From: Heptranchias perlo
Taxonomy: Eukaryota
Length of the DNA: 64,000 nt
NCBI RefSeq assembly: GCF_035084215.1
Contig: NC_090336.1
Location: 29,078,001-29,142,000 of the forward strand
Direction: 5' to 3'
Made by a program: the position numbers and the translations under genes. Positions 9,138 through 63,465 of the stretch are shown piece by piece; within the stretch, counting starts at the first letter, position 1; each line of letters begins with the position of its first letter. Under the pieces are notes generated by a model. The model ran no database searches. It saw nothing but the letters and a program-made list of their open reading frames with translations, and had not been told where the DNA came from.

Positions 9138-9503
9138 CAGAAACAGTCATTGACGATTTTCCACTTGCATTGTCTGAGATTATAAAAACAACACAGGTGT
9201 AATCTCCTTCTTCAGTAAATTGAACACTTGGAAGAAAAAGGGAAGCAATTCCATTCTTCAACTCATCATCATAAATTGTGGCTCCTTTTCTGTATGGTGT
9301 ACGTTTTCCACCGTTGAATTGATACACCTCTCGTCTGCTAGAATCTGGAGAACCTAATTCTTGGACGAACCACTGAACTCCCACATGTTGAAGGTCAATT
9401 TCTTTAGTCGTGTAACCAGACACTCGGCATTCCAGAACAATATCGTTATTTACAATGGCTTCCACAGTTCTCGAATTCATCGACACAATTAGGCCACTTT
9501 CCA
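9138..9503 (-). CDS. NCR3LG1-like: Gene B exon: Ig V-set domain, B7-H6/NCR3LG1-like
   Basis: attgcag|TG ... TCT G|GTAAGA; 366 nt, phase 1-1. IVLECRVSGY..VGVQWF..RKGA..LKNGIASLFLP..EEGDYTCVVF; clear paralog of the gene A V domain. Confidence 0.92.
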
Positions 9504-32831: not shown

Positions 32832-33133
32832 TCAACTTAATTTCAGCCTGAAATATCTGGGAACTGGGTCCATCTCAGTGGTAATCTCAACTTGGAGCAG
32901 ACAATTGTCATCTTCTTGCCTTGGTATGTAAGTTAGTGCAGTGGTGAAACCTTTACCAGTTTCAAATGGTGTGTTTGCAATAAAGCTCTTATCTTCAAAA
33001 GGGTAGACGTCTCTGTACCAGGTGATGTGAGACTCCGCTATGGTGAATCCTTTAACGGTGCAGGAAACAATTACGGGTTGGCCAGCTTTAGGACTTTCTG
33101 TTTGGCAAGTTATCTTTGACACTGTCTGAAAAT
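32832..33133 (-). CDS. Gene A last coding exon: post-TM C1-like Ig domain 7 ending in TGA
   Basis: ttccaacag|AT (phase 1). DFQTVSKITC..VSCTVKGF..ITW..LLQVEI..LKLS*. A possible donor ACA|GTAAGT lies at 32808, 24 nt past the stop. Confidence 0.82.
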
Positions 33134-33391
33134 CTGTTGGAATAAAATTTGAAATGTAAAACCCTTAATAATGTGACAAAAATAAAGATTTTATTTTACA
33201 AAGTAAACACAAGAAAAGTTGGTAGTTCCAGCAGTACAGCTCGGCACTCCCAGACTAGGGGCTTTTTATTTTTAATCCCAACTACTTCTGACATTTGAAC
33301 TCAGCCATCAATTGGCATTTCCTGCCTAAAAACATGGAATCAGATGGTGTACATCATGGCCATGGAATATTCTATGAGAGTGACGTGGCTG

Positions 33392-35281
33392 TCATAGAAT
33401 CATAGAAAATTTACGGCACAGAAGGAGGCCATTCGGCCCATCGTGTCCGCGCCGGCTGAGAAACGAGCCACCCAGCATAATCCCACTTTCCCGCATTTGG
33501 TCCGTAGCCCTGCAGGTCATGGCTCTTCAGGTGCACATCCAGGTTTTTTTTTAAATGAGTTGAGGGTTTCTGCCTTTACCACCCTCTCAGGCAGTGAGTT
33601 CCAGACCCCCACCACCCACTGGGTGAAAAAAGTTTTCTTCATTTCCGCTCTAATCCTTCTACCAATCACTTTAAATCCATGCCCCCTGGTTATTGACCCC
33701 TCCGCTAAGGGAAATAGGTCCTTCTTATCCACTCTATCTAGGCCCCTCATAATTTTGTACACCTCAATTAAATCACCCTCTGTTCCAAGGAAAATAACCC
33801 CAGCCTATCCAATCGGTCATCATAGCTAAAATTCTCCAGTCCTGGCAACAGCCTCGTAAATCTCCTCTGCACCCTCTCTAGTGCAATTACATCCTTCCTG
33901 TAATGTGGTGAACAGAACTGTACAAAGTACTCAAGCTGTGGCCTAACTAGTGTTTTATACAGTTCCAGCATAACATCCCTACTTTTATATTCTATGCCTC
34001 GGCTAATAAAGGAAAGCATTCCATATGCCTTTTTAACCACCTTATCTACCTGTCCTACTACCTTCAGGGAGTGCATGTCCACAGATCCAAGGTCTCTCAC
34101 TTCCTCTACACCTCTCAGTATCCTCTCATTTATGGTGTATTCCCTTGCCTTGTTTGCTCTCCCCAAATGCATTACCTCAACTTCTCCGGATTAAACCCCA
34201 TTTGCCACTTTTCTGTCCATCTGACCAGTCCATTGATATCTTCCTGCAGTCTACAGCTTTCCTCCTCACCATCAACCACACAGCCTATCTTTGTGTCATC
34301 CGCAAATTTTTTAATCATGCCCCCTACGTTTATGTCCAAATCGTTAATGTACACCCCAAAAAGCAAAGGACCTAGTACCGAGCCCTGCGGCACCCCACAG
34401 GAAATCGCCTTCCAGTCGCAAAAACACCCGTCGACCATTACCCTTTGCTTCCTGCCACTGAGCCAATTTTGGATCCAATTTGCCACATTCCCTTGGATCC
34501 CATGGGCCTTTACTTTTTTGACCAATCTGCCATGTGGGACCTTGTCAAAAGCTTTGCTAAAATCTACGTAGACTACATGAATTGCACTACCCTCATCGAT
34601 CCGCCTCGTCACCTCCTCGAAAAATTCAATCAAGTTAGTCAGACACGACCTCCCCTTAACAAATCCGTGCTGACTGTCCTTGATTAGTCCATGCCTTTCT
34701 AAGTGACAGTTTATCCTGTCCCTCAGAATTGATTCCAATAATTTGCCCACCACCGAGTTAGGCTGACTGGCCAGTAATTACACGGTCTATCCTTCGCTCC
34801 CTTTTTAAACAACGGTACAACGTCAGCAGTCCTCCAATCCTCCGGCACCACGTCTGTATCCAGTGAAGTTTGGAAAATGATTGTTAAAGCCTCCGCTATT
34901 TCCTCCCTGGCTTCTTTTAACAGTCTGGGATACATTTCATCCGGCCCTGGTGATTTATCCACTTTCAAAGATGCTAATCCCCTTAATACTTCCTCTCTCA
35001 CTATGTTTATCCCATCCAATATTTCACACTCCTCCTCCTTAACTTCAATCCCTGCATCATCCCCCTCCTTTGTGAAGACAGATGCAAAGTATTCAATTAA
35101 GAACCATACCCACATCTTCCACCTCCACACATAGTTTACCTTTTGGGTCTCTTATAGGCCCTACTCTTTCCTTAGTTATCCACTTGCTCTTAATGTATTT
35201 ATAAAACATTGTTGGGTTTTCTTTGATTTTACCTGCTAATATTTTTTCATGCCCTCTCTTTGCTTTCCTAATTTCCTTTTA
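33392..35281 (-). mobile_element. CR1 LINE, 5'-truncated
   Basis: [34 protein letters not shown]; tcatagaatcataga tail. Confidence 0.93.
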
Positions 35282-36299
35282 TGGTCAAATAGCTGCCAGG
35301 GTGTGACCTGTGAGTTGTGGGTGTAAAGCTTGCAACAGCAGTAATGTGTGAGGGTGAGATGAAGCATCTGATTGGAAGAGTTAAGTACTGATTTAAAGAG
35401 TTTGTTGGTAGGTGGGTGATGGGGGGGTGTAGTGCTGAGCAACTTTTATTCAATATTTTGAAGGAACTCAACAATTTGTAAACATAAGGATGGGACCTAC
35501 ATGTGTGTTTTATGTGAGCGATTTCTGATCTCCGCTCAGACCCGCATCTTATATTTCGAAAATATAAAAGTCCTGCAAACTTTGAGCAGCCATGTTGTTG
35601 CTCGTTAAAAATTTCAGACTTCCCATCATCACCATGCTTCACTGTATTGCAGCATAGATTCACTTCACCATTGGCTTTTACCACTTCCTGCAGCCAAGGT
35701 GCACCTTCCCTTTAAGAGGTGCAGGCTGCCTTTAAGTGGTGCTAGCCACACGCGATATCTGGGCCCACTGCTGGTGAGCAGCCACTCAACAGCGCAGCTA
35801 GACCTGGCTGCACCCACCACCAATCATGTAAATCACCAGGCAGCATGAATGTTATGTGTTGCCTGCATCTCAACAACCGGGCACGGGTTAATCGCGCACT
35901 GCGATCACCACGCCCGTTTTTGGGGGTTAACTAATTTAACCCCCAGTATGTTTTGGTGGTGTTGGCGTTGGAGGGGGGAATGTGGCCAAGACACTGAGAA
36001 AATAGCTTTCTTTCCTGAATAATGCTATGGGATCTCTTACATCTGATGGGATCTAGTTTAACATCTTATCTGAAAGACAGCATCTCGGACAATGCAGCAC
36101 TCCCTCAGTACTACATTGAAGTGTCAGCCTGGAATATGTGTTCAAGTTCTAACACACAATCTTCAGACTATGAAGCGAGTGTACTACCACTGATCCAAAC
36201 CGACACTTGAAGCAGTGTAGTACCTTATATACTGCATGCCTTGCAGCTGTCAGCATAGCCATTATTGTCTGTATTCTGATCCGTGGGGTTTACTGCACA

Positions 36300-38200
36300 T
36301 CTTAAGAGCAAAAGGTGATTCTCACTTTTTGCATGCTTTCTTTAAGAAGACAAGCCTTATAAATCAGGAGAAATCAGCAACAGTTGGCAAGCCCCCAAAC
36401 CTGAAACGTACCACTTCAATGAGGAGGAATCCATGCAGATCCTGAGGGAAGCAACTTGGGTGATAAAGACAGCAAGGTAGAAGGGCATTTGCCAACAGAG
36501 TGTTTGTCACAGCATTCTATTCTTCCTATTGCATCTTGCATTAATCCTCAGAAGCATATCGTGAGATCCTTATCACTCCTTGCACTGAAATTGATGTGCG
36601 CTCCATTCCTGAGATTCTATTCAAAGCTGTCTTTCTCTTTTCCTTTTCTAGGGGTTTCTGGAGAAGGTGAGCCAGGCTCCAGTGCATCCAGCCCAGCCAG
36701 CACTTCAAAGCATGAACCAACACTCACTCTCTCCCTCCCAAGCACCAGCACAGTGCCATCCATTAGAGTCTGAGTGTGAAGGGAATGCACTGGGTGATGC
36801 ACATGTCACGTGAGCAGGAGGAGCCAGCGTGGAATGTGAGGCGGAAGTCATGACTGACTGAACAGTCAGGATATAATAACCCTTGGCTCAAAAGTTTGGG
36901 GATCCTGATCTTGCAGGGCATTAAAGGTATGTGAGGCAGAGAAGACAGTGTCAGATACTGTGCAGCAGATGGTGGGTAAACTGGAGGAGTCCACTCTGTG
37001 CACTGCAGTCCATCTTGGAACATGTGGTGAGGGGACCATATGACAGAGGCCACGAGAGCAGTCTGCAATTCTTTCATGGTTGCTAAGACTGCTGTCAGAG
37101 GTCTGGGGTGTCAGATTGGGGACAGTTGTCTCACGGATCTTTATTAATCTCACTATTACTGATAAATCTCCTTTCCTGCAGATCAGTGACCATGCAAAGC
37201 CACTGCCCAATGCTGGTAGCATGGCAGGAATGCATTCAGATGATGGTCTTTCTGGGCAGCAGCACATGCGTGCCATCCTGCCAGCCCCTCAGATGCCCGC
37301 ACATGAAAGGAGGCAGGGCCAAATTTCTCAATCAGCAGCAGAAGAGGTGCAGCCTACAGCAGGTCCATCTCAGAACTCTTCTGCCTTGAGGAAAGGGCCA
37401 CTGCATGCCCCGAGGCTCATGCTGACATTGCATCCAGCCACCTCACATCATCCTGCCACTCAGATGGCACCTAGGAAAAGCATTAGGTACATGCACACAC
37501 ACTTTAGAGGTTTTGATTAAAACTATGGTTGCATTAAAGTTGTGTGTCATCTATGGCAATGTTTGAAAATGGATTTGATGAGATAGCGTGAATGAAAACT
37601 CTGAGTTGATGCACACAGGAAAGATTGTGGGGGAAATAATCTGCTCGAGAGTGCAATGACCAGATGCGGTAGTCAAGAGAAGGCCTCATGTATCAGTGTG
37701 GCACAAATATGCTCTGCAGCTAGGAAAAGGTTGTGCTCCATATTATCTACAGGCCTCTGCTGCTGCTCCTTGTCTTCTTCGGTCAAATGCAGATAAGGGT
37801 CATATCTTCCTGTATCCTCAGGTGTGGGATACTGATGAGTAGATGTCATGGGTCTCCAGTGCAGCCTCACCAACTTGGTTTCCCTACTATCCTCTTCTTC
37901 CAAGAAGCAAAGGTAGTGGGGAATCCCCAATTGGAAACCTACGTTGTGTCTTGTCTGAAGTGGGGGGTCCACATCAAAGGGCAGAGAGTAATGCATTAGG
38001 AACAGCAAAAAAAAGTGGAGAAAAAAGGATTTTGCAAAGCTTTAATTATATCTGTGTTTGGCTCTTTAAATGTATTTTTGTCTTTTCTCCAGCATCTAGC
38101 AACCCTGGACAGCCATTGTATACAGGCATGGTTACTGCTAAGTACAAATAAGGCAGTACTGATGCAAAATAGGATGCATGATGTTATCATATGATTACTG
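36300..38200. mobile_element. Degenerate Harbinger-like internal remnant (partly duplicated at 40131-41300)
   Basis: Low-complexity Pro/Ala/Gln-rich frames similar in character to 21550-22420, converging on a minus-strand frame ending ..AAEHICATLIHEAFS. The family assignment is inferred. Confidence 0.4.
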
Positions 38201-38214
38201 CCTAATTTTAATAA

Positions 38215-39615
38215 TTGTAAACAATTTTACAACACCAAGTTATAGTCCAGCAATTTTATTTTAAATTCACAAGCTTTCGGAGGCTTCCCCCTTCGTCAGG
38301 TGAACGATGTGAAATGAGATCCTCGAAATTAAATCGCATTTATAATTCACAGAACAATGCTTGGTGAGTACAGACAGTTTTTTCAACTGCCCGTTGCCAA
38401 GGCAATCAGTGTGCAGACAGACAGGTGTTACCTGCCAGGTCTCACAGAATATACAAATCACCAAAAAAAAAACAACAAACAAAAAAAAACAGAAATGGAG
38501 AGGTAGAAACATAGAAAAGACAGCAACTGACCCGTTATATTAAAAACAGATAACATTTGTTCGCTGGTGGGGTAACGTGTAGCGTGACATGAACCCAAGA
38601 TCCCGGTTGAGGCCGTCCTCATGGGTGCGGAATTTGGCTATCAATTTCTGCTCGACGATTTTGCGTTGTCGTGTGTCTCGAAGGCCGCCTTGGAGAACGC
38701 TTACCCGAAGGTCGGTGGATGAATGTCCATGACTGCTGAAGTGTTCCCCGACTGGGAGGGAACCCTCCTGTTTGGCGATTGTTGCGCGGTGTCCGTTCAT
38801 CCGTTGTCGCAGCGTCTGCATGGTCTCGCCAATGTACCATGCTCTGGGGCATCCTTTCCTGCAATGTATGAGGTAGACAACGTTGGCCGAGTCACAGGAG
38901 TATGAACCATGCACCTGGTGGGTGGTGTCCTCTCGTGTGATGGTGGTATCTGTGTCAATGATCTGGCATGTCTTGCAGAGGTTACCGTGGCAGGGTTGTG
39001 TGGTGTCGTGGACGCTGTTCTCTTGAAAGCTAGGTAATTTGCTGCGAACGATGGTCTGTTTGAGGTTGGGTGGCTGTTTAAAGGCGAGTAGTGGAGGTGT
39101 GGGGATGGCCATAGCGAGGTGTTTGTCCTCATTGATGACATGTTGAAGGCTGCGGAGAACATGGCGTAGTTTCTCCGCTCCGGGGAAGTACTGGACGACA
39201 AAGGGTACTCTGTTGGTTGCGTCCCGTGTTAGTCTCCTGAGGAGGTCTATGCGATTTTTTGCTGTGGCCCGTCGGAACTGTCGATCGATGAGTCGAGCGT
39301 CATATCCCGTTCTTACTAGGGCGTCTTTCAGCGTCTGTAGGTGTCCATCGCGTTCCTCCTCGTCTGAGCAGACCCTGTGTATTCGCAGGGCCTGTCCATA
39401 GGGGATGGCCTCTTTGACGTGGTTAGGGTGGAAGCTGGAAAAGTGGAGCATCGTGAGGTTGTCCGTGGGCTTACGGTAGAGTGAGGTGCTGAGGTGCCCG
39501 TCTTTGATGGAGATTCGTGTGTCCAAGAAAGAAACTGATTCTGAGGAGTAGTCCATGGTGAGCTTGATGGTGGGATGGCTTACGGTAGAGTGAGGTGCTG
39601 AGGTGCCCGTCTTTG
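38215..39615 (-). mobile_element. 5'-truncated Penelope-like retroelement (RT C-terminus plus GIY-YIG endonuclease)
   Basis: Open frame to the stop at 38540: FLDTRI..LYRKPTD..IPYGQALR and NVVYLIHC..WYIGETMQTLRQRMNGHR (GIY-YIG). ATAA flanks both ends, and the empty site is seen at about 41305. Confidence 0.93.
38266..38304 (-). ncRNA. Minimal type I hammerhead ribozyme motif in a Penelope pLTR
   Basis: UUCAC-CUGACGA-A-GGGGG AAG CCUCC-GAAA-GCUU-GUGAA: intact core, stems I and II, palindromic AAGCUU helix III. Confidence 0.72.
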
Positions 39616-41891
39616 ATAAGATCACCCATTTAGGGTGGGTGCTGCTGCCAACAGCCAGAAAATGATGGCAGAGAATTAGGCAAGCACTGAAGTGGGCTGG
39701 CAGCTGGCACACAGCATCTCCACACCTGCCTACCTAAACAGGAATATCTGGGCTATTCTGTATAATGATCTGAAATGCCACACTGACACCATTGTGGATC
39801 AAAACCAAACATGCACAAAACAGGAACTTCTAAAAAATTAGCAGTTTACCTTCATCATTTTGTATGTTGCAATATGAACGATCATCTTCATTTTCACCTG
39901 AACAGAGAAACAAGTTAGTTAAATTCGGTATCACATTAGTCAAATTAAATAAGTACTTCCAATGTTACAGTATTGAGTAACTCACCTAATAGTATTTAAA
40001 ATAACTGAGGTCACCCAAAATTAACTATTTTCAGCATTAACGAAAGAAAACCTTGTTTATTCAATATAAAACTTCAATGTGAAATAAACATTCAAATGAA
40101 GACTTAATTTTGTTGAATTAAAAACAATCAATATGACAGAGGCCACGAGAGCAGTCTGCAATTCTTTCATGGTTGCTAAGACTGCTGTCAGAGGTCTGGG
40201 GTGTCAGATTGGGGACGGTTGTCTCACGGATCTTTATTAATCTCACTATTACTGATAAATCTCCTTTCCTGCAGATCAGTGACCATGCAAAGCCACTGCC
40301 CAATGCTGGTAGCATGGCAGGAATGCATTCAGATGATGGTCTTTCTGGGCAGCAGCACATGCGTGCCCTCCTGCCAGCCCCTCAGATGCCCGCACATGAA
40401 AGGAGGCAGGGCCAAATTTCTCAGACAGCAGCAGAAGAGGTGCAGCCTACAGCAGGTCCATCTCAGAACTCTTCTGCCTTGAGGAAAGGGCCACTGCATG
40501 CCCCGAGGCTCATGCTGACATTGCATCCAGCCACCTCACATCATCCTGCCACTCAGATGGCACCTAGGAAAAGCATTAGGTACATGCACACACACTTTAG
40601 AGGTTTTGATTAAAACTATGGTTGCATTAAAGTTGTGTGTCATCTATGGCAATGTTTGAAAATGGATTTGATGAGATAGCGTGAATGAAAACTCTGAGTT
40701 GATGCACACAGGAAAGATTGTGGGGGAAATAATCTGCTCGAGAGTGCAATGACCAGATGCGGTAGTCAAGAGAAGGCCTCATGTATCAGTGTGGCACAAA
40801 TATGCTCTGCAGCTAGGAAAAGGTTGTGCTCCATATTATCTACAGGCCTCTGCTGCTGCTCCTTGTCTTCTTCGGTCAAATGCAGATAAGGGTCATATCT
40901 TCCTGTATCCTCAGGTGTGGGATACTGATGAGTAGATGTCATGGGTCTCCAGTGCAGCCTCACCAACTTGGTTTCCCTACTATCCTCTTCTTCCAAGAAG
41001 CAAAGGTAGTGGGGAATCCCCAATTGGAAACCTACGTTGTGTCTTGTCTGAAGGGGGGGGGTCCACATCAAAGGGCAGAGAGTAATGCATTAGGAACAGC
41101 AAAAAAAAGTGGAGAAAAAAGGATTTTGCAAAGCTTTAATTATATCTGTGTTTGGCTCTTTAAATGTATTTTTGTCTTTTCTCCAGCATCTAGCAACCCT
41201 GGACAGCCATTGTATACAGGCATGGTTACTGCTAAGTACAAATAAGGCAGTACTGATGCAAAATGGGATGCATGATATTATCATATGATTACTGCCTAAT
41301 TTTAATAAGATCACCCATTTAGGGTTCGTGCTGCTGCCAACAGCCAGAAAATGATGGCAGAGAATTAGGCAAGCACTGAAGTGGGCTGGCAGCTGGCACA
41401 CAGCATCTCCACACCTGCCTACCTAAACAGGAATATCTGGGCTATTCTGTATAATGATCTGAAATGCCACACTGACACCATTGTGGATCAAAACCAAACA
41501 TGCGCAAAACAGGAACTTCTAAAAATGAGCAGTTTACCTTCATCATTTTGTATGTTGCAATATGAACTATCTTCTTCATTTTCACCTGAACAGAGAAACA
41601 AGTTAGTTAAATTCGGTATCACATTAGTCGAATTAAATAAGTACTTCCAATGTTACAGTATTGAGTAACTAACCTAATAGTATTTAAAATAACTGAGGTC
41701 ACCCAAAATTAACTATTTTCAGCATTAACAAAAGAAAACCTTGTTTATTCAATGTAAAACTTCAATGTGAAATAAACATTCAAATGAAGACTTAATTTTA
41801 TTGAATTAAAAACAATCAATGCTGCAGTTATTACAATTTTAATATCGGAAATGTTTTGCTCTGAATCTGACTCCAATAAAACAACATTCAC

Positions 41892-42206
41892 CTTTAATGA
41901 GTAATTTGAAATCTTTCTCTTGAACTTCCTTTGTTTCTATGTGAAGCACCTCACATTTGATGGAACAATTATTATCTTCTTCAGCTGCAATAAATTTTAT
42001 GCTCGAAAGTGAAGCAAAGAGGCCATTGTCAGCAATCACAGCAGTGCTGTTAATCACTTTATCCAAATAAATTCCCCCGTTTTTAAACCACTTTACTTGG
42101 ATTTTATCAGGAACATAGCTTGTCAATGAGATACTGAGTGTTGTAAGCTGATTTACTTTAGGCAGTTCTGGATCAGCTTTAATAACGGACAAGGCAGGAG
42201 ACAAAG
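41892..42206 (-). CDS. Gene A post-TM C1-like Ig domain 6 (B-strand Cys lost)
   Basis: ttctttcag|CT ... AAA G|GTGAAT; 315 nt, phase 1-1. LSISLTSYVP..VKW..IKCEVLH. Confidence 0.88.
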
Positions 42207-43126
42207 CTGAAAGAACAAATAAAAAGTACTTGAATGTTTAGCCATTGAAACAAACTGATTAATTTTTAATGCGAACAAAATAAAAAAATATAGGGTTCTT
42301 GACTAGTTTGTAATATACACAAATGAAGTATGGGAATATATAGATCTCATGAACTTGTTCTTCAAAACTACTGTCATCAGAATTATTGGAATATTCTGTA
42401 GATATACAGTTCACATATTTACATAAAAGATTCTATTGAGAACAGCGCTGATCTTAAAGTGAAGATGGTGGTAGGATATTTTGGTGCGCAACTGCCTGGC
42501 AACATGCAGTGACTGACAGCTTTACCCATGGGTGTCAAGGGACTCCTGAGCAGTAAAGGTCACAGGACTAATGCTTCAGACATAAGGTAGTGACTCACAA
42601 AAGGAAAAAGGACAAAATAAAAACTCAATCAAAATCATCACAATTTTAGTTATTTGATCCAAATCCTGCTAGAAGTATCTATACTAAAAGTTTAATTTTT
42701 TTTTTAAAAAGTTGAAAAAAAAGGAACAATTCCTGGAAATTCACTCCTCTGACATCTTCAGGTAAGAAAAAAAAGTTCAGAACTTTTGTGATTTAGCTCC
42801 TATAAATTTAATTACTTTAAAATATGTATTTATTGGCAATTATATTCTTACTGTGAATCTAAACCACCTTAAATTGTATATACGTCCTTTTAGCAACTTC
42901 AACTGAAGTTCTACTGTACGATTTATCTAATTCTAATTTGCTCGCAGTCATTTATTCTGAAATGACTCATAAATGTGACCCCCACCCTATGTCCTGCATC
43001 GAGCAGAGTTATATCAGATTATTTCTGTTGTGACCTAGTAAAGTACAGCAATATAATCCCAAACATTTATATATAAAGTGGAAATTTTCAAACCTGGGGA
43101 GGGAGAAGGATCAGGGTGAAACATAC

Positions 43127-43438
43127 CTGGAAGTGTCAAAAATGCCTGTTTTTCAATTGGAGTCTTTAGATTAGCATGCTCCACACGGAAGGAAAAATCT
43201 CGTCCAAAATCTAGTGCAGTTGGTTTTACTTTCAAGCAGGAAGACAACCGACAACATCCACTTTCCTCCCGCAGAGGTCCTTTAATTGTGATCCCTTCAA
43301 AGATCGTTTTTCCTTTTTGTAGCCAAATTGTATTGATAGGATGTGGGGAAAAGTTACTGATATTGCAGATGAGAGCAAGATCCATGCCATATCTAACGTC
43401 TGGTGGGTCAAATTTGATGTCTTCAACAAATGGAATTC
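43127..43438 (-). CDS. Gene A post-TM C1-like Ig domain 5 (F-strand Cys lost)
   Basis: taaacag|GA ... CCA G|GTATGT; 312 nt, phase 1-1. GIPFVEDIKFDPP..LICNISNFSP..IW..FSFRVEH. Confidence 0.88.
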
Positions 43439-43897
43439 CTGTTTAAATTGCAAAGAAGCACAATACTGAATAACCAAAAATGTTTAAGGATCAAAAAGGG
43501 AGGTTAAAAAGATCTATCTTTTCTCCCCCAAATGATAGATATTTAAGATGACAAGTGTCATCAAATCTACCATTGTGCAGCTTAGGCTTTGTTTCAAAGA
43601 ACGTGATGACATTTTTAGAACTTTTTACCTTACAAAACATTTATGCTGCTGACTTGATAACCACAGCTATGTTGGGATACCACCAATTTAGAGCCAGTGG
43701 AACCACTGAGAGGAACTCTAAAGTCACAGGCAAACAAGGAACGTAAGCGAGATGGCATTATTGCTGAAGGCATTGTGGATCACTAAAAGAGGCAGTAGAA
43801 GCCTGCGCCTAAAATGGCAGAGCTATCACCATTTTCAACATAAACACACAGCCAGCTCCTTTTGGAGGCAGCCATGTTTTTGGCCACTAGCAGACAC

Positions 43898-44650
43898 TTG
43901 GGGGGGGGGGGGTAATTTTAACCCCCAAGAACGGCTGGATGGTGGGCGGGTGGGCAGTCAAAATAGTAGATATTTGGAGCGGGACCACATTCCGACTACA
44001 ATGCACCCAACTTCTGGGTTTAACCCAGGCAGGTTTGGATGTGTGTGCACAGCAGACACCAGGAAGTACCACCCCTACTTAAAACCGGTGGACCGATACT
44101 TAAAGGGGCAATGTACTTCATTGAAATCATATGAAAGCAGATGGGAAGGGCCGGATCCCCGTTGCTGGCCCACCCCCACCCCACCCCCCGACTCAGCCCC
44201 CCCCTCGATCCCCGATGCTGGCTGGACCCCCCCCTCCCCTCGATCCCCGATGCTGGCTGGACCCCCCCCTTCCCCTCGATCCCCGATGCTAGCTGGCTGG
44301 ACGCCCCCCCCACCCCCCTCGATCCCCGATGCTGGCTGGCTGGCTGGCTGGCTGGACCCCCCCCCCCCACCGCCTTTGATGATGTCCATGTACCCCCCCA
44401 CCACCCGCCTTCCAATTTTTTGTGATGCCAATGATCTCTCCCTCCTCCTCCTCTCTGATTTGCTCCTTTCACTGCCAACAGGCAGCCATCCTGTCAATCT
44501 GGCTGCCTGGCGCGTGCGAAACCGGGAAGCTCAAATACTCACCTTCAAATGAGTTGCTATCGCAGATTGCGACGCACTCAATTTGCTTCCGGGTTCCCCA
44601 CACGAATATCCGTGGGCGCGTGGGGTACCCAGCTCCGAGTAAAAATCATG
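43898..44650. mobile_element. GC-rich MITE-like element with internal ~34 bp tandem repeat (ccctcgatccccgatgctggctggacccc, 44190-44365)
   Basis: Start ggggtaattttaacccc; shares sequence with 29470-29592; repeat units visible. Confidence 0.6.
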
Positions 44651-44956
44651 CTCTGAATGTTTGAAGGTCTTATGGTCACAACGTACAGCCTAGTTTTATT
44701 TACTGCAAGTATAGTGCACTGCGGAATTGCTTCAGGAGTCATTCCGGTTATATAAATGTAACGTTTATAAAATTATGTTTTATCCTCAACAATCACCAAT
44801 ATGCCAGCAGTTAGTCCTGTGATGTTTGTCTTACCTGACTAAACAGCCTCTATTAATAAAAACAATATTAATTTAATGAATTTGAAACACTTAAATCTGT
44901 CCAACATTCCGTAATTGTTACTGTGAAGTTGCACTTCTTGTTGGAACAATATTTAC

Positions 44957-45277
44957 CTTTTATTTTCAAAAAATGACTGGATGAGACAGGCTTGTTTGAA
45001 GTTTCAGAATGAAGGATTTGCATTTTGAACTCTTTCCCATGGTCCATAATAGTTGGAATAAATGTCCTTTCGGACAGTCGAGAGTACAAACCAGTCTCTG
45101 TATCCTTTGCAACTTCTTCTGTTTTAACTCCATCTGGAGTTTTATCAAATGCTTTGAACCAGAATATTTGATTTTCTTCTGGAAGGAAGCCATATGCTTT
45201 GCAGGAAAGTGTTACAGGTTTTCCCACCTCTGGGTAAAGTGGATCCACTATAATTTCTGTTACCTTTGGCACGGACA
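44957..45277 (-). CDS. Gene A post-TM C1-like Ig domain 4 (F-strand Cys lost)
   Basis: gtacag|TG ... AAA G|GTAAAT; 321 nt, phase 1-1. LSCKAYGFLP..IFW..FKMQILH. Confidence 0.88.
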
Positions 45278-46670
45278 CTGTACTCATACAAAAGAAACAA
45301 TGTTAAAGAGATTGTGTAACTGAAAGAACCCCACAATTTTTTTTTGAAATGACTAGTGTACCTTGATAAATTTTCAAACATTGATTTCTTGAATGAACTA
45401 TCCTTTTTATTTTGCCCCTCTTTCTCCCTTCACACGGTGGTACAGGTGATGGTGCAGAGTGGCCATTCATTACGTGCGAGACTGAACATTGAGTACTAGG
45501 AGACTATTCAAGCCTATTCCTGCTTTCACCGAATAAGGACCCACACACACTTTCCAACAGGGGTCATTGGACAGTGACAATTCAACTCCCTAATCCATAG
45601 GGGCCGAGACAGATTGTAGCATTCCGCCACTGCCGCAGCCGAGATCAGTTAACTCAGGGATCAGACGTGCAACCTTACAGTTTGCTATGGCTCAGGCCCA
45701 AATCGGGTGGTGCCTTTTCCCAATGAGCTAATAGGGAGCTGCAAACAAAGCTTTCCAACTCCATTCAGTTTGGTTCAGCAGTACTACTCTCACTTCTAAA
45801 GTCTGGGTTCTAGTGCCATTCCAGGACTTGAGGAAATAATTTATGCCAGGAGAGTGCAGTACTGAAAGAGGTGCATTCTTTCAGATGAGATGCTAAACAG
45901 AGTCTCTGTCCACAGGTGGACATAAAAGATCTCAATGCACTTTTCCAAAGAGCAGGGAGTTCTCCAGATGTCCTGGCCAACATTCCGCCCCTAACCAAAA
46001 TCACCAAAACACAGATTAACTGGTCATTCATCACATTTCTGTTTATGGGACCCTGCTGTGCTCAAATTGCCTGCCATGCTTGCCTACAAAACAACAAAGA
46101 CTACACTTGAAAAATAATTCCCAAAACACTTGGCTGCTAATGACTTACTTAGGATGTGAAATGCACTATATAAATGCAAGTTCTTTCTTTCGTATTATTA
46201 TTCTTAGTTATTTTGGGCTTTCATTTTATTTATTGCTCTTCTAGACAAAAGAGAACTCCAAATGGAATACTTTTCACAGACTGCAAAAAGATCAACTGGG
46301 ATTGTCTCAGTTTGCTAAAATATAGAAAAAAAAACACCAAGTTAATTTTATTTTTTGGTGAGAGCAAGCTTTCCATTCAATTTATTTTAGTTTCTTTATT
46401 TCCCTTGTCTCCAATAGGATCGCTCCATGTCATGGACCTTCACTAACCACGACCAATGCTGAAACTGCCCACTAGAATTGTTAGTCACCAACTTAAATCT
46501 GTATATTAGTTTCAAATTATTAATATTTCCCAATTAACAAATCTTTACAGTTGATGCATTTTTAAATCAAACCAGAGCAATTAAACATCTAAGTAAATTA
46601 TATGTTTTTATGAGAAATGTTAATAAAAATTAGTAATAGTCAAGATTGTGGTCAGAACTTGGTTACTTAC

Positions 46671-46979
46671 CCAGTTGATGGAGTACCCAGTCAGCTTCCA
46701 CTGGCTCGGTTAGGCTATCATGTTCTACTTGGCATGTGTACTTCATGTTAACATTGGCTCTCATAGGTATAATCTTCACACTACTTGTCAAATAATAGAG
46801 TGCATCATTTCCCAGAGTAGGCTCACACGGGGCATCTGATTCTTCTGTCATTTTCTCACCATTTTTGAGCCATGTAACTGTGATTTCACGGGGGTAAAAA
46901 GAATGTATTCGACAGCTTAAGGTCATCGGCTCTTCTGCAATAGCTTTTTCTGATGTTATTGGGTCCAGCTTTGGAGTGG
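46671..46979 (-). CDS. Gene A post-TM C1 Ig domain 3
   Basis: ttttttcag|CC ... CTG G|GTAAGT; 309 nt, phase 1-1. LSCRIHSFYPREITVTW..YTCQVEHDSL, a full C1 signature. Confidence 0.92.
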
Positions 46980-47424
46980 CTGAAAAAAAAACAAAAAAAA
47001 TTACCATAGTCTTTAACACAAGCAGATTAGAGATATTGTGGGCTAGATTTTTTGCCTAGCCACAGCCAATGGGCAGAAAATTTAATCCACTGTGTTCTGG
47101 AAATTCTGATTTAAGGCTTAGGTATAAAGTAAAAAGTTACAAAGTGACCTAATTTAAATCAGTGACTCCAGGACAAACAGCTAATGAGTTTCCCTATTAA
47201 ACATTTGAGATCTGGATATTCTTGGACCCCTTCAAATTCTTCCCTTGTAAAAAAGCACTCTGTCTTCAAAGAGTAATTAGAGAAATACAGCACTCAGGAC
47301 ACTTCACAGGATTCTGCAAACAAAATTATCAATTTTGTTGCATAACAAAAAACAAGGAAACAGTTTCTGTAAACAAAATGTAATCCATTGTTCTATACAA
47401 GGTATTGTCAAAAATATTACATAC

Positions 47425-47793
47425 CTTGAATGTTCAGCGTGCTTTCTCTCTCTTGGTCACTGCCTGTACACACATGCTGTACCTTACAGATGAACTTTGT
47501 GTCCTGATCTTGCTCAATATCTGGCACAATAACTAGTACACTGGTGATGCTGTATGTTTTGTCTTCATACCCCATCTCACTTATGTAATGGTTATACTTC
47601 TCTTTGCCACTAGGAAAGCTTGTTTTGTTGTGCTGATCTAGCCGAACAATTTCTTTCAAATAATTCGTTCCGATTTGCTGCCATGTGATACTTAATGGTT
47701 TTGGTTTAAATCCACTGATTGGACAAGTCAAGGCCACAGGCTCATTATGAATGATGTGAGGTGGCACGACAATTTTTGACATCTTTGGTGGCA
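47425..47793 (-). CDS. Gene A post-TM C1-like Ig domain 2
   Basis: cccaaag|TG ... CAA G|GTATGT; 369 nt, phase 1-1. LTCPISGFKP..ITW..FICKVQH. Confidence 0.9.
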
Positions 47794-48055
47794 CTTTGGG
47801 AAAGAAAAACAAAACAAAGAAATCACCTATTTAAACTGAAGGAATTTTCATGAGTCAGTAAGAGCAAGAAAATATTATTTTACTGTCTGAATTTTCTATG
47901 ATTTAAGAGTCTACAGATGGCAGAACTGCATTACCACTATTAATCACATGAATGTCACTTCATATGTACCAAATAAAACAAGTTAACAAAAGAAATGCAG
48001 AATGGAATCACATAGCATAAATGTTAATGTTTAAAAGCAAATGTTCATGATTTAC

Positions 48056-48490
48056 CTCCTTCAACACCCAGTGTTACACTTTTCCTAACACGAAGAGTTT
48101 TATGTTGAACTTCAATAGTTAATATAGCCCCATCATCTTTGTCTACATCAGGATACATTTTAATATTGCACATTACATTGAAAGTCCCATCACTGTTAGC
48201 GTCACATTCCGGCTCGAAAGAAATAAAGGATGCATCGCGTTCATAACCATTCATAAGAAGCTGTACTTCAGCTCGTTTTCTTTCCTTCTCTGGTTTTCCT
48301 TTGTTCTTTCGCATCTGGTCCAGACTACACCAGATAAAAATTCGCTTTTCACTTTGATCCTCCTTCCTCTTTAGGAATAAAACAATTTCAATCTCCCGAG
48401 GTCTAAATCCAGTAACTTGGCAACTGATGACGGCTTCCTCACAGTGGCGAAGGATGGGAGGTTTGCTGAGCTCACTAATTTTTGGAGAAA
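48056..48490 (-). CDS. Gene A post-TM C1-like Ig domain 1 (charged insertion; F-strand Cys lost)
   Basis: ttgcttag|TT ... GGA G|GTAAAT; 435 nt, phase 1-1. ISCQVTGFRP..NSDGTFNV..LTIEVQH. Confidence 0.88.
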
Positions 48491-48803: not shown

Positions 48804-48917
48804 CTTTTTTAAATTTTATGCAAGTATAAAATCCAGCACCAAACAATAGTCCACATAGCAGCGCCGTAACAACTATACTTGCAACAATTCCTCCTACTGC
48901 TGAAGATTTTTCAGGCT
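48804..48917 (-). CDS. NCR3LG1-like: Gene A exon: transmembrane segment
   Basis: tttcag|AG ... AAA G|GTAATG; 114 nt, phase 1-1. EPEKSSAVGGIVASIVVTALLCGLLFGAGFYTCIKFKK is a hydrophobic helix followed by a basic stop-transfer. Confidence 0.9.
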
Positions 48918-53312: not shown

Positions 53313-53633
53313 CTTTCACTGTGAGTTTAGCTTCCAGTGAACGACCATCAGGAAGTGATCGGTGCATCACGGTACACTTGTACTTATTACCATCATCATC
53401 CATTGTTGGTTCAATTCTCACTCTACTGGAAACATCAAAGGTTCCGTCACTGTTGGAAATTTGGGCACCAGTGCAGATATCTGTTGTTATTTTCACAGTT
53501 TTCTCCTTTGATATCTTTTCCCAGTTGAGATCATACTGCTGAGGATAAAATCCTCTAACGTCACATCTCACAGACCCCTCTGAGCCATTCAGAATGGTAA
53601 TGTCTTGTGTGGACAAATGCACCACTGGTTGAG
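53313..53633 (-). CDS. NCR3LG1-like: Gene A exon: extracellular Ig C1-set domain
   Basis: aacacag|CT ... AAA G|GTAAGT; 321 nt, phase 1-1. CDVRGFYP..W..CTG..NSDGTFDVSS..YKCTVMHRSL with both canonical Cys. Confidence 0.93.
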
Positions 53634-58083: not shown

Positions 58084-58425
58084 CTGACACCTGCATTTCT
58101 GCACTCTTTTCTGCCTTTTCAGGTGTGACAAATACAGAACAAGTGTATTCTCCTTCTTCATCAAACTGTACTTTTGGAAGATGAAGTGAAGCATCTCCTT
58201 TCTTTAATTTGGCCTCAGACATTTTTGCTCCTGGTCTTTTTGGGAAATGGGCTCCTGCCTGAAATCTATAGACCATTGTCCTCTGATTTTTGGGCCCAGT
58301 ATGCCACTCGACACCAACATTTGTTAGGTCAAAAGTGTTGTAGCCGGTAATCTTACATTCCAGGGAAACATCTTCATTCACTAAGACATGCTTTGGACTG
58401 GTGAATATGTTCACACCCAAGGTTT
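58084..58425 (-). CDS. NCR3LG1-like: Gene A exon: Ig V-set domain, B7-H6/NCR3LG1-like
   Basis: Acceptor gacatttag|AA, donor G|GTAAGA; 342 nt, phase 1-1. VSLEC..GVEW..RPGA..LKKGDASLHLP..EEGEYTCSVFVTP resembles the B7-H6 V domain as recalled (RPGA..LKSGDASLRLP..GEYRCEVVVTP). Confidence 0.92.
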
Positions 58426-60582: not shown

Positions 60583-63465
60583 ACAATATTTAGGTTTACA
60601 CGTGAATGGTAAGAAAACCATTCAGCCATGAAGGGCTGCACCTAATCTCTATTCTGCACTCACTGGATGTCAACATACCTGCACATTGCAGAAGTCTGTT
60701 GATTACAATCAGAAGTGGGTCCCTGGGCCATACAGGAAGTTTCTACTTGTCAGATATAGAGGGAACACTCTGTAAGGGCACATCCCACTTACCCAAGTCC
60801 AGAGAATTCAGATGCAGGTTGGCAATTGCCACACTTTAGGGACCCCCAGGTGAGGGTGCGCTATTGCTGGAGTGTAACCAACTAAAGCCACCCAGCTTAC
60901 CAGTTCAGAATTCTTGTCAGCTTCCCACTATTTGTCTAACTAGGGCCATCCCACTCATTAGGATATATGGCTTGCATGGTTACTTGGAGCTGCCCTGAAA
61001 GAATCTCAGGCCCCAGTGACAGGTCTGATTAATAACCTATTCTGGCTCACCAATCAACAGTGCCGGCGGACTTACCTGGCTTAAGTTCTGATACCGCCAC
61101 CGCAAAAGGTAAGTTTAATAAAAAAATACTTTCCTCAAACATGCAACCGGAAGAAGCAGTCCTGACAACAGTTGCCGACGGCGATGCTGTGGCCCGAAAT
61201 TTATATCCGCATTGCTGGTGACCTGCCTAGGGCCTACTTTAAATGAAGCCCGAGGCTTAATTCTGATCGGGTCTTGGGCCTACCTGTTTTAGCGCAAACC
61301 ACATTGCTAAAATCAATTATATTGCCCTCATCATCATTCCATTTCAGATCAGCTTTCTCAGCACAGATTAGGGGTCAAACCTGGAATCTTTCTGGTCTGT
61401 ATGGAAAGTCATCTTTTCTAATAGCTTCTCTTTGCTAAAACACTGTGAAACAAGACCTCTTTTCAGCATGCAGGCTGTAATCATATGCCTTGCCATTTTC
61501 ACGCAGGTACTGGAGTATAAACCGTAAAAGCCAAGTTATACTTAGCCTGACTCCTTCTCTGTGGTTCATACCACAAGCATGTGTGGGGCAATATTTCCAA
61601 CAATGTTGCAAAAGTAGTCGAGTCTGGAGGTGCCAAAGGCATGGAAATGGATTTCAGCAGCGGATGGGCAGTGGTGGAGGAGGGCGATGTGATAGAGGCA
61701 GTTCTTGTGATGGAGAGATATGGAGCTAGACGCTCAGCAGAGTTAATTGGGATGTCAAGGTTGCAAACAGTTTGGTTCAACCTAAGACAGTGGCCGGGAA
61801 AAGGGACGGAATTGGCGGCAAGGGTACGAAGTTTGTGGTGAGGGCCAAAGACAACGGCTTTGGTGTTCCCGATGTTCAGTTGGAGGAAATAGCGGCCCAT
61901 CCAGGACTAGATGTCTGACAACACAGAGGCAGTGAGGTAGAGCTGGGTGTTGTCAACATACATGTGGAACCTGACCAGTGTCTTCGGATGATGTCGCCAA
62001 GGGGCAGCAAGTAGATAGGTAAGAGGATAGATCCTTAGGAGACTCTAGAGGTTACGGTGTGGAGGAAGGAAAAGAAGCCATTGCTGGAGATGTTCTGGTT
62101 ACAATTGGATAGATCAAGTGAGGATTAAAAAAAGAGAAACCTAAATCCCAACCTTTCTTTATGTATTACATCTATCTAATCACATTCTGTTCTAACATTC
62201 CTTACATCGACATTATGCAAGGCCCTCTCTATATTCTTTACCCAAGTACAGTATTAATATAAACTGTAAAAATAATCCCTTGATTTTAAATGTTTTCCAA
62301 AATAATTACTGCATTTTCCCCCCCAATGAATAGAAGCTTTTCCATTGAAGAAGAAAAAAAGCTTTTGGACTGCACCAGTGAACAAGAGATGGAAGATCTA
62401 GCTCCAGCTATTTGTGCATCTTTCTTATTTTACACTACAAATGAACAAACAAACTTGTATTTATGTAGCACCGATCACACCCTCAGGGTGTCCCAAAGAG
62501 CTTCACAGCCAATGCATTACTTTTGAAGTGCAGTCACTGTTGTTGCATGGTCAAAAAGGACCTTTGGGTCCAGACCACAGTGTCTCCCAGCTGACCCTGA
62601 CTGCACCAGTGAACAAGGGATTGGACACCTAGAACAGGCGACAGGAAGCAGCAAATATGACTACCCACAGTTCCATAAAAAAAACGTAACAAGCCAGAGG
62701 CAATCCAAATAAAGACAGGAAAGGCAGAACAGCACTCGGGAAATGCAAATAAACAGAGGTTAAACAACATATAAGCCAACCCCAGAAGAGGGACAGTAAG
62801 TGGCCATAGTCATAACCAGCAGCAAATGAATACTTCTTATCCACTGGAGCAGCAAATAGGAGGATTAAAAGTGTACATAAGAAGTGTTAACTCAAAGTCT
62901 CTGCAGGTGGGACACAGATCAATGGTTAAATGGAGCCAGAAAGCTCAGGTATAGTGTCCTGCTTTTGAAAACCGTTTTCCCCCATTGTGAATTCCTTGAG
63001 TTATGTTGCTCTCCACCCTCTCAATTCCAATCACTCTAGCAGATGGTCAACGGGAAAGCCATTTAAAAAAAACGGTTAGCCAGTCCAGACAGTATCAATT
63101 GAAGTCCCAATTGCTGACGTAGGACTGCAGCATGAATCTTTGTACCAGGAGGACAAAGGGGAGGCCTCAGTTCAGAACGTGGAGACACTAATGCAGAATA
63201 GGTGAGCAGCAGACTGACCACATTGCTGAAGAAAATAACTAAGTATATTCTGCGACAAAAATGAAGCATTTTTCTCTGTTAGATTTTCTACTGGATTCTT
63301 TATTGCTGGCTACAAAGTTACAGTCAGTTATTGCGTAATGCCTTCTGCAGGCTGGAGGGAATCTACAATACAATCTAGCTGATATTCACATTTTATGGCA
63401 AGATAGCGACATGAAAAATTCTACAATTCATTGGTGTGCATGGGATGACTGTTCATATTGTACCT

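What the first reader, a model, noticed from the sequence alone, without database searches (positions are those of the whole stretch)
32832..48490. Canonical Ig disulfide lost only in the post-TM domains
All four ectodomain V/C1 exons of genes A and B keep both cysteines. Five of seven post-TM domains have replaced one with a hydrophobic residue: D1 LTIEVQH, D4 FKMQILH, D5 FSFRVEH and D7 LQVEIT (F strand), and D6 LSISL (B strand). Most still keep the [GSN][FY]xP turn, the C-strand Trp and the F-strand His, and all frames and splice sites are intact. This fits Ig folds maintained in a reducing cytosol and independently supports the topology. Caveat: several N-x-S/T sequons persist (D2, D5, D6).
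Basis: partly seen in the sequence, partly recalled or inferred. Interest (0 to 1): 0.8.

Follow-up and report, generated by a model that had tools for sequence, protein, structure and literature searches.

The report
Shark B7-H6-like gene, disulfide-poor Ig tail
An expressed shark gene for a B7-H6-type surface protein carries seven antibody-constant-type (C1) domains after its membrane anchor, and only these have lost the usual internal disulfide bond; the pattern is kept from sharks to alligators and fits domains that fold inside the cell, a place where I found no report of this domain type.

Summary
Gene A runs on the minus strand: V, C1, a 114-nt TM exon, seven C1-set exons (D1-D7), one or two 48-nt acidic mini-exons, then the stop. 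Spliced RNA contigs from four runs of one sample join C1 to TM to D1 through D6 at GT-AG introns, so the array lies after the anchor in the mRNA. V and C1 of genes A and B keep both canonical cysteines. D1, D4, D5 and D7 lack the F-strand Cys and D6 lacks the B-strand Cys.

About 20 species, from chimaera to alligator, carry the same architecture. In them V, C1, D2 and D3 keep the pair, while the losses in D1, D4, D5 and D6 are ancient and position-specific. The D7 loss is limited to sharks and rays. The ectodomain is closest to human B7-H6.

Tail domains are as conserved as the ectodomain and are predicted as confident C1 folds. N-glycosylation sequons occur at chance frequency in the tail but are enriched outside. 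This fits a cytosolic Ig tail.

It is not proven. D2 and D3 keep their Cys pairs almost invariably, and NCBI lists TM-less isoforms in two species. The scan had already noted a neighbouring paralogue (s1-882554, s1-882629).

The parts
61076..61142 (-). Candidate leader exon of gene A (MFEESIFLLNLPFAVAVSELKP, donor CAG|GTAAGT, phase 1). Unverified.
   Evidence: Script scan for ATG + hydrophobic core + phase-1 donor. The RNA contig leaves about 257 nt for leader plus 5'UTR. No similarity to homologue leaders was found.
58084..58425 (-). V-set exon of gene A; both canonical Cys kept
   Evidence: Pfam V-set 43.5 bits. The best solved relative is human B7-H6 at E 5e-15. Boundaries.
53313..53633 (-). 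C1-set ectodomain exon of gene A; both Cys kept
   Evidence: Pfam C1-set 45.3 bits. B7-H6 at E 1.3e-14. Its 3' end is the loose end joined to the TM exon in RNA.
48804..48917 (-). TM exon, phase 1-1: EPEKSS-AVGGIVASIVVTALLCGLLFGAGFYTCI-KFKK
   Evidence: Sequence. An RNA joint 48490->48804 with GT-AG is seen in all four runs, and the loose end behind 48919 equals the end of the C1 exon.
48056..48490 (-). D1, C1-set with a Lys/Glu-rich insert. B-strand Cys kept; F-strand Cys position is Ile (LTIEVQH).
   Evidence: The homologous insert is disordered in the AF2 model.
47425..47793 (-). D2, C1-set; both Cys kept
46671..46979 (-). D3, the most canonical C1-set domain (64 bits); both Cys kept
44957..45277 (-). 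D4, C1-set with a single Cys (B strand); F-strand position is Met (FKMQILH)
   Evidence: AF2 pLDDT 94.7. Foldseek top hits are the MHC class II beta2 domain and beta2-microglobulin, TM 0.74-0.80.
43127..43438 (-). D5, C1-set; F-strand position is Phe (FSFRVEH)
41892..42206 (-). D6, C1-set; B-strand position is Ile (LSISL); F-strand Cys kept
   Evidence: The RNA loose end before 43127 reads into its 5' end.
41538..41585 (-). 48-nt acidic mini-exon (ENEEDSSYCNIQNDE) carrying a Tyr motif SxYxxI
   Evidence: Splice-aware scan. 315 nt (D6) plus 48 nt equals the 363 nt that the RNA contig carries beyond D5.
39850..39897 (-). Duplicate mini-exon (ENEDDRSYCNIQNDE) in a 97-99% tandem duplicate; whether it is used is unknown
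32832..33133 (-). D7, terminal coding exon ending ...FRLKLS-stop. F-strand position is Val (LQVEIT). Cys kept at A7, B22 and i-4 (C75).
   Evidence: The C-terminus ...KLS is conserved in the family. Its splicing was not checked by reads.
9124..9522 (-). Gene B V exon (ORF range); both Cys kept
5515..6015 (-). Gene B C1 exon (ORF range); both Cys kept
2345..2461 (-). Gene B TM exon, phase 1-1 (PKVVTPVGIIVGSVFVSVLMCIVILGIGFFTYLKYLRK). Its C1 array lies before the window start.

Best explanation
Gene A is an expressed member of an old, uncharacterised jawed-vertebrate family of B7-H6-like (NCR3LG1-like) type I membrane proteins.

Its layout is: signal peptide, V and C1 ectodomain, one stop-transfer TM helix followed by KFKK, then a C-terminal tail of seven folded C1-set Ig domains with a short acidic, tyrosine-bearing linker before the last one.

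The tail is made after the anchor, so it should fold in the reducing cytosol. There the B-F disulfide cannot form and is not selected for. One half-cystine was replaced by a core-filling hydrophobic residue in D1, D4, D5 and D6 before cartilaginous and bony fishes split, and in D7 later, in sharks and rays. The remaining cysteines persist as buried free thiols.

Shown here: the exon structure, the splicing of the TM exon into the mRNA, the Cys pattern and its conservation, and the predicted folds.

Inferred: the membrane topology, the redox state, and the function. The likeliest function is a rod-like cytosolic scaffold or dimerising module that couples engagement of the ectodomain by an NKp30-type receptor to reverse signalling, or to control of surface expression.
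For: RNA:
- GT-AG joints D5-D4, D4-D3, D2-D1 and D1-TM are present in four runs.
- The loose end at the TM exon equals the end of the C1 exon.
- One 3145-nt contig carries mini-exon, D6, D5, D4, D3, D2, D1, TM and 920 nt upstream.

Family:
- HMMER with D3 gives 52 hits below 1e-30.
- About 45 cluster representatives share V-C1-TM-D1..D7.
- They come from Callorhinchus (including a 1079-aa UniProt entry, V9K7L7, that also has the TM), Cetorhinus, rays, Latimeria, Protopterus, Erpetoichthys, amphibians and Alligator. Some are named NCR3LG1.

Ectodomain: the V exon's best solved relative is human B7-H6, and B7-H6 ranks second, after one IgG chain, for the C1 exon.

Cysteine census:
- V and C1 keep the pair in 41/41 proteins. 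D4 lacks the F-strand Cys in 40/41, D1 in 40/41, and D6 lacks the B-strand Cys in all. D5 has Phe at the F position in most.
- Lone half-cystines are as conserved as the pairs: D4 B-strand 21/22, D6 F-strand 18/18, D7 A-strand 17/17. Cys conservation here therefore does not need a disulfide.
- Related families with internal TMs show the same bias: pre-TM 281 with the pair against 18 without, post-TM 275 against 127.

Topology proxies:
- Sequons: ectodomain 56 against 43.0±5.9 expected; tail 96 against 96.0±8.5.
- Conserved sequon columns occur only in V and C1.
- Net charge is -0.67 on the N-side flank of the TM and +1.81 on the C-side flank.

Constraint: mean pairwise identity is 30-39% for D1-D7 against 36-40% for V and C1.

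Fold:
- AF2 of the Cetorhinus homologue gives pLDDT of about 82-95 in all seven tail domains, and a helix at the TM.
- Window D4 gives pLDDT 94.7 and matches MHC-II beta2 and beta2-microglobulin.
Against: - No direct evidence of topology or redox state.
- D2 and D3 keep both Cys in 20-22 of 21-22 genes over roughly 450 million years. That is what a functional disulfide would look like.
- Many osteichthyan D7 domains have four Cys: A7, B22, i-4 and F79. This is compatible with two disulfides.
- NCBI lists isoforms that differ exactly by the TM exon in Bombina (34 aa) and Hemitrygon (38 aa). Such a form would be secreted with the array outside the cell.
- In some related proteins most post-TM domains keep both Cys, for example P0001.
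- The leader exon of gene A itself is only a candidate.
- The RNA comes from one sample, and contigs cannot exclude a minor TM-skipped form.
Confidence: 0.6

Rival explanations
1. The array works mainly outside the cell. A TM-skipped splice form (C1 joined directly to D1, in frame because every exon is phase 1-1) gives a secreted nine-domain protein, perhaps a soluble decoy ligand. D2, D3 and D7 form disulfides there. D1, D4, D5 and D6 are disulfide-less extracellular Ig domains of the kind known from a few other receptors. The TM form would then be a membrane-tethered variant whose tail is secondary.
For: TM-less isoforms are annotated in Bombina (P0040 against P0187) and Hemitrygon (P0183 against P0186). 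D2 and D3 Cys pairs are nearly invariant, and many D7 domains have four Cys. Exon phases allow the skip.
Against: Only TM-containing junctions are assembled in this shark's RNA, and no loose end at 48490 reads into C1. The TM form is the first or longest isoform in every species, and the 1079-aa Callorhinchus UniProt entry V9K7L7 also has the TM. Tail sequons sit exactly at chance with no conserved positions, while ectodomain sequons are enriched. Odd, shifting numbers of Cys (one in D4; three in D7 of sharks and chimaera) are awkward for a secreted protein.
Confidence: 0.2
2. Both forms matter. The same array is used in two compartments, cytosolic in the anchored form and extracellular in the secreted form. 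The mixed Cys pattern reflects a compromise between the two.
For: It reconciles the ancient losses with the invariant D2 and D3 pairs and the annotated isoforms.
Against: No evidence here for the secreted form in this species. It is the least economical of the explanations.
Confidence: 0.13
3. The post-TM exons are decaying relics, or belong to another gene, and the Cys losses are neutral damage.
For: D7 falls below the Pfam cut-off and D1 matches only in part. A large intron full of transposons lies before D7.
Against: All exons are open and phase-compatible, and D1 to D6 with the first mini-exon are spliced into one RNA together with TM and C1. The same nine-domain order and C-terminus are kept in about 20 species. 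Tail identity equals ectodomain identity. AF2 confidence is high.
Confidence: 0.02

Closest known systems
Human B7-H6 / NCR3LG1 (PDB 3PV6, 4ZSO, 6YJP), ligand of NKp30
   Same: Signal peptide, IgV plus IgC1 ectodomain, single TM, type I. The V exon's best solved match is B7-H6 (E 5e-15), and B7-H6 ranks second for the C1 exon (E 1.3e-14). Alligator and frog members carry this name in NCBI.
   Different: The human protein is short, and its cytoplasmic tail is described as gag-like with tyrosine motifs, not as Ig domains (my recollection of Brandt et al. 2009; not checked here). Here the tail is seven C1-set domains. Binding to NKp30 and orthology by synteny were not tested.
Intracellular Ig domains of muscle proteins (titin, telokin, obscurin; I-set)
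   Same: Ig sandwiches that fold in the cytosol without a disulfide. From memory, some (telokin, titin) still carry the two core cysteines in reduced form, which is a precedent for D2 and D3.
   Different: Those are I-set domains in soluble giant proteins. These are C1-set domains, the type otherwise confined to Ig, TCR, MHC, beta2-microglobulin, tapasin, SIRP and B7 ectodomains, and they hang from a membrane anchor.
Shark UrIg2 and similar multi-C1 arrays with a C-terminal TM (PMC12227049)
   Same: Long tandem arrays of C1-set domains in cartilaginous fish. Proteins with this layout (multi-C1 array, C-terminal TM) are among the D3 hits; I did not look up their names.
   Different: There the array lies before the TM (VJ plus nine C1, then TM and cytoplasmic region). 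In my census such arrays keep both Cys in nearly every domain.
Related uncharacterised proteins with V-C1-C1-TM-(C1)n or C1-TM-(C1)n layout (frogs, Erpetoichthys; e.g. P0019, P0017, P0001)
   Same: An internal TM followed by C1-set arrays. The first post-TM domain has lost both Cys (LA, VV, LV, IV), while pre-TM domains keep them.
   Different: SIRP-like rather than B7-H6-like ectodomain. Many later tail domains keep both Cys. Some models may be fusions of neighbouring genes.
Neighbouring paralogues in the same genome (scan notes s1-882554, s1-882629)
   Same: Same family and same reading: a B7-like protein with an intracellular C1 tail.
   Different: Different gene copies with six-domain arrays. 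The Cys census, sequon statistics and TM-less isoforms reported here are my own tests on gene A and the family.

Membership tests
B7-H6 / NCR3LG1 (B7 family) | IgV followed by IgC1 ectodomain with canonical disulfides | tested here: met
   Pfam V-set 43.5 bits and C1-set 45.3 bits. Both Cys pairs are present. The PDB top hit for V, and second hit for C1, is B7-H6.
B7-H6 / NCR3LG1 (B7 family) | Type I membrane protein: N-terminal signal peptide and a single TM after the C domain | tested here: inconclusive
   The TM exon is present and spliced. Signal peptides are clear in homologues. For gene A only a candidate leader exon was found.
B7-H6 / NCR3LG1 (B7 family) | Binds NKp30 (NCR3) | not testable with these tools
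   Needs a binding assay.
B7-H6 / NCR3LG1 (B7 family) | Orthology to the mammalian gene (synteny, phylogeny against other B7s) | not tested
   Only similarity ranking was done: B7-H6 5e-15, ahead of CD276 5e-10 and TAPBPR 8e-8. The NCBI names are automatic.
B7-H6 / NCR3LG1 (B7 family) | Short non-Ig cytoplasmic tail as in the human protein | tested here: not met
   The tail is seven C1-set domains.
Ig C1-set domain (PF07654), for D1-D7 | Score above the Pfam gathering threshold (21 bits) | tested here: met
   D1 23.3, D2 36.2, D3 64.1, D4 29.2, D5 35.4, D6 34.4. D7 scores 17.9 and fails on its own, but it aligns with family D7 domains, and the homologous Cetorhinus domain is a confident beta-sandwich.
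Ig C1-set domain (PF07654), for D1-D7 | C1-type seven-strand sandwich | tested here: met
   Window D4 gives pLDDT 94.7. Foldseek matches HLA-DR beta2 (TM 0.79, rmsd 2.1-2.3 A), beta2-microglobulin and IgM Cmu4. Only D4 of the window was folded.
Ig C1-set domain (PF07654), for D1-D7 | Canonical B-F disulfide | tested here: not met
   Absent by sequence in D1, D4, D5, D6 and D7; present as a Cys pair in D2 and D3.
Cytosolic Ig-domain proteins | Domains located in the cytosol | not testable with these tools
   Inferred from the position after the stop-transfer TM, the positive-inside flanks and chance-level sequons.

The most novel reading that the evidence does not exclude
C1-set Ig domains are the hallmark module of antibodies, T-cell receptors and MHC, and are otherwise known only outside the cell. 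Here they would be used inside the cytosol, as the conserved tail of an ancient B7-H6-like ligand family that mammals lost or replaced. The tail would act as a dimerising or partner-binding rod that signals backwards from an NK-receptor ligand, or senses the state of the cell that displays it.
Probability: 0.5. Interest if true: 0.8.

Novelty: new variant of a known kind. Interest (0 to 1): 0.7.

Why it matters
If the tail is cytosolic, this is a new cellular location for the C1-set domain. It would also be a new kind of cytoplasmic tail for an immune ligand, kept for about 450 million years in cartilaginous fishes, lobe-finned and basal ray-finned fishes, amphibians and crocodilians.

That would raise three questions. 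What did B7-H6 do before mammals replaced its tail? Do ligands of NK receptors signal into their own cell? How stable are C1 folds without their disulfide, which is of interest for intracellular antibody engineering?

The family-wide Cys pattern is a cheap, sequence-only indicator of topology, and it can now be tested directly.

Tried and rejected
I used per-domain protein identity instead.
2. Literature. Searches by locus and accession names, by phrases for cytoplasmic or intracellular Ig domains, and by B7H6 with shark or Xenopus found nothing describing the tail. Flajnik et al. 2012 (PMC3709836) and an id recalled from memory for a 2015 Ohta & Flajnik review (PMC4594805) are not held. Prior description therefore cannot be excluded.
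3. Leader exon by similarity. blastn between genes A and B, and tblastn with the Cetorhinus N-terminus, found none. Only a pattern-based candidate remains.
4. Compensating shifted disulfide.
   - D4 has a single Cys, so none is possible.
   - In D1, D5 and D6 no second Cys column is conserved with the remaining half-cystine. The D1 E-strand Cys (14/22) lies in the same sheet as the B strand and, by strand register, faces outward.
   - The D7 i-4 Cys is ancestral, not a shift, and may pair with the invariant A-strand Cys. Distances could not be measured because model coordinates are not returned.
5. Separate-gene or fused-model reading: rejected by the RNA joints.
6. Joined spliced model.
8. 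The big word-index protein search was not used, because relatives were already in hand.


Full report
**What is there.** The finding lies on the minus strand of a transposon-rich vertebrate window. Translation and splice-site reading give one gene, A, with these exons:
- V: 58425-58084
- C1: 53633-53313
- TM exon: 48917-48804
- D1: 48490-48056
- D2: 47793-47425
- D3: 46979-46671
- D4: 45277-44957
- D5: 43438-43127
- D6: 42206-41892
- 48-nt acidic mini-exon: 41585-41538, with a near-identical duplicate at 39897-39850
- D7: 33133-32832, ending in FRLKLS-stop

Every internal exon is phase 1-1. Gene B, downstream in the window, has V (9522-9124), C1 (6015-5515) and its own TM exon (2461-2345).

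**Is the array really behind the membrane anchor?** Four runs of one sample hold spliced contigs, so they are RNA.
- GT-AG joints link D5-D4, D4-D3, D2-D1 and D1 (48490) to the TM exon (48804) in all four runs. The D3-D2 link is not listed as a joint but is carried within single contigs (two runs).
- The loose end behind 48919 is the last 30 nt of the C1 exon.
- The loose end before 43127 is the start of D6.
- One 3145-nt contig carries 363 nt (315 of D6 plus 48 of the mini-exon), then D5, D4, D3, D2, D1, TM and 920 nt upstream.
- No C1-to-D1 junction was seen, but contigs drop rare forms.

The TM exon encodes 28 apolar residues followed by KFKK. D1 starts right after them.

**The cysteine observation.** It is correct as written.
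- V and C1 of both genes keep the B- and F-strand Cys.
- At the F-strand position D1 has Ile, D4 Met, D5 Phe and D7 Val.
- At the B-strand position D6 has Ile.
- D2 and D3 keep both.
- D1 to D6 pass the Pfam C1-set cut-off. D7 (17.9 bits) does not.

Within the window alone the contrast of 4/4 against 2/7 is not significant (p = 0.06).

**The family.**
- HMMER with D3 against 1.84 billion representatives gave 52 proteins below 1e-30.
- Typing their domains with the window's exons, and marking hydrophobic segments, showed about 45 representatives with the same order: V-C1-TM-D1-D2-D3-D4-D5-D6-(extra)-D7.
- They come from Callorhinchus (including a 1079-aa UniProt entry, V9K7L7, that also has the TM), Cetorhinus, Scyliorhinus, Pristiophorus, Narcine, Amblyraja, Hemitrygon, Pristis, Latimeria, Protopterus, Erpetoichthys, Polypterus, salamanders, a caecilian, several frogs and Alligator.
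- Nearly all are "uncharacterized protein". The Alligator, Rhinophrynus and Bombina entries are named natural cytotoxicity triggering receptor 3 ligand 1, which is B7-H6.
- In line with that name, the V exon's best solved relative is human B7-H6 (E 5e-15, ahead of CD276 and TAPBPR). B7-H6 ranks second for the C1 exon.

**Conservation of the pattern.**

Across 41 family proteins:
- V and C1 keep the pair 41/41.
- D3 always keeps it, and D2 keeps it in all but a caecilian.
- D1 has the F-strand Cys in only one protein (Pristiophorus). D4 also has it in only one, a truncated ab initio model.
- D5 has Phe at the F position, except in some amphibians.
- D6 always has Ile, Val, Leu, Thr or Ala at the B-strand position and always keeps the F-strand Cys.
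- D7 keeps the pair in chimaera, coelacanth and most tetrapods, but has Val in sharks and rays.

So four of the five losses predate the split of cartilaginous and bony fishes. The D7 loss is lineage-specific.

In a non-redundant set of 22 genes:
- The lone half-cystines are as conserved as the pairs: D4 B-strand 21/22, D6 F-strand 18/18.
- An extra A-strand Cys in D7 is invariant (17/17), although its likely partner at i-4 comes and goes.
- Conservation of Cys in these cores therefore need not mean a disulfide. This weakens, but does not remove, the objection raised by the invariant D2 and D3 pairs.

In a C1 profile census of all 190 proteins fetched:
- Family pre-TM domains: 42 with both Cys, 0 without.
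- Family post-TM domains: 95 with, 107 without.
- Other relatives with an internal TM: pre-TM 281 with and 18 without; post-TM 275 with and 127 without.
- Arrays that end in a C-terminal TM keep both Cys nearly everywhere.
- Fisher p is 1e-12 and 3e-18, but the sequences are related, so these are not true probabilities.

**Decay or function?**
- Mean pairwise identity across 12 species is 30-39% for D1-D7 and 36-40% for V and C1. Against Cetorhinus the tail is 50-70% identical and the ectodomain 54-64%. The tail is as constrained as the ectodomain.
- AlphaFold2 of the Cetorhinus homologue, with a 26-row family alignment, gives confident sandwiches for all seven tail domains (10-residue block pLDDT mostly 82-95), a helix at the TM, and disorder only in the stalk, the D1 insert and the D6-D7 linker.
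- The window's own D4, which has a single Cys, folds at pLDDT 94.7. It matches the MHC class II beta2 domain, beta2-microglobulin and IgM Cmu4 (TM 0.74-0.80).

**Topology proxies.**
- N-x-S/T sequons number 56 in V plus C1 against 43.0±5.9 in shuffles, with columns shared by 7/20 and 10/20 genes. In the tail they number 96 against 96.0±8.5, with no well-shared column.
- Net charge of the 12 residues before the TM averages -0.67. After the TM it averages +1.81. This is the positive-inside pattern for N-out, C-in.
- The mini-exon encodes an acidic stretch with SSYCNI, which fits the ITIM-type S/I/V/L-x-Y-x-x-I/V/L pattern. Cetorhinus has VHYENI and Scyliorhinus TYENI at the same place. This is a hint of cytosolic tyrosine signalling, and it is not conserved outside sharks.

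**What argues the other way.**
- NCBI lists isoform pairs that differ exactly by the TM exon in Bombina (34 aa) and Hemitrygon (38 aa). Because all exons are phase 1-1, skipping the TM exon would give a secreted V-C1-D1..D7 protein.
- D2 and D3 pairs are nearly invariant, and many bony-vertebrate D7 domains have four Cys.
- I therefore give about 0.6 to the cytosolic-tail reading, 0.2 to a mainly extracellular role through a secreted form, and 0.13 to both.
- Decay or gene fusion is essentially excluded.

**Comparison and novelty.** The ectodomain places the gene with B7-H6. The tail does not resemble what I remember of the human tail; that is from memory and was not checked. C1-set arrays are known before a TM, for example UrIg2, and disulfide-free Ig domains are known in cytosolic muscle proteins, but those are I-set. 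I found no paper on a post-TM C1 array in the held library. The key B7H6 evolution paper is not held, so an earlier description cannot be ruled out. The scan itself had already flagged a paralogue 37 kb away as a B7-like protein with an intracellular Ig tail (s1-882554) and the collinear array of gene B (s1-882629). My results agree with those notes. They add the family-wide Cys census, the sequon statistics and the TM-less isoforms.

**Limits.**
- Model coordinates are not returned, so Cys-Cys distances could not be measured.
- The RNA is from one sample.

Noticed in passing
window 40131-41637 vs 37038-39949: Tandem duplication (99.3% over 1178 nt, 97.3% over 338 nt) that copies the 48-nt acidic mini-exon. 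The lower copy is interrupted by a ~1.4 kb insert holding a 390-aa ORF (38540-39712, minus strand), which I take, untested, for a mobile-element endonuclease (GIY-YIG/Penelope type).
   Followed up: partly
window 63466-63756 vs 31835-31545: A 291-nt inverted repeat at 99.3% identity flanks most of gene A. It is probably two recent copies of one mobile element.
   Followed up: no
window 47794-48055 (D1-D2 intron): RNA contigs diverge from the assembly at 47818 and 47975 (A/T-run loose ends), and there is a back-joint 47995->47801. In three runs the D2-D5 contigs are 2-3 times deeper than the D1/TM/5' contig. Possible causes are 3' bias, a polymorphic intron, or 5'-truncated transcripts starting near D2.
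   Followed up: no
window 48279: RNA contigs of three runs read A where the assembly has T. On the coding strand this is AGA>AGT, Arg>Ser, in the Lys/Glu-rich insert of D1. It is probably an allele.
   Followed up: partly
window 2345-2461 (-): TM exon of gene B, phase 1-1, with the same build as the TM exon of gene A. No D1-like exon lies in the 2.3 kb left before the window edge.
   Followed up: partly
proteins P0001, P0007, P0017, P0019, P0020 and others: A second set of uncharacterised frog and bichir proteins has SIRP-like V-C1-C1 or C1 ectodomains, an internal TM, and then up to ten or more C1 domains. The first post-TM domain has lost both Cys. Post-TM C1 arrays are therefore wider than the B7-H6-like family, though some models may be gene fusions.
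   Followed up: partly
window 31798 and 31928 (-): Two AATAAA signals lie 0.9-1.0 kb past the stop of gene A. They are candidate polyadenylation sites and were not checked by reads.
   Followed up: no
window 33517-35130 (-), 59233-60214 (+), 30053-31500 (+), 2987-4531 (-): Several LINE-type reverse-transcriptase ORFs lie in the introns and flanks of genes A and B. I identified them by eye, not by a family scan.
   Followed up: no
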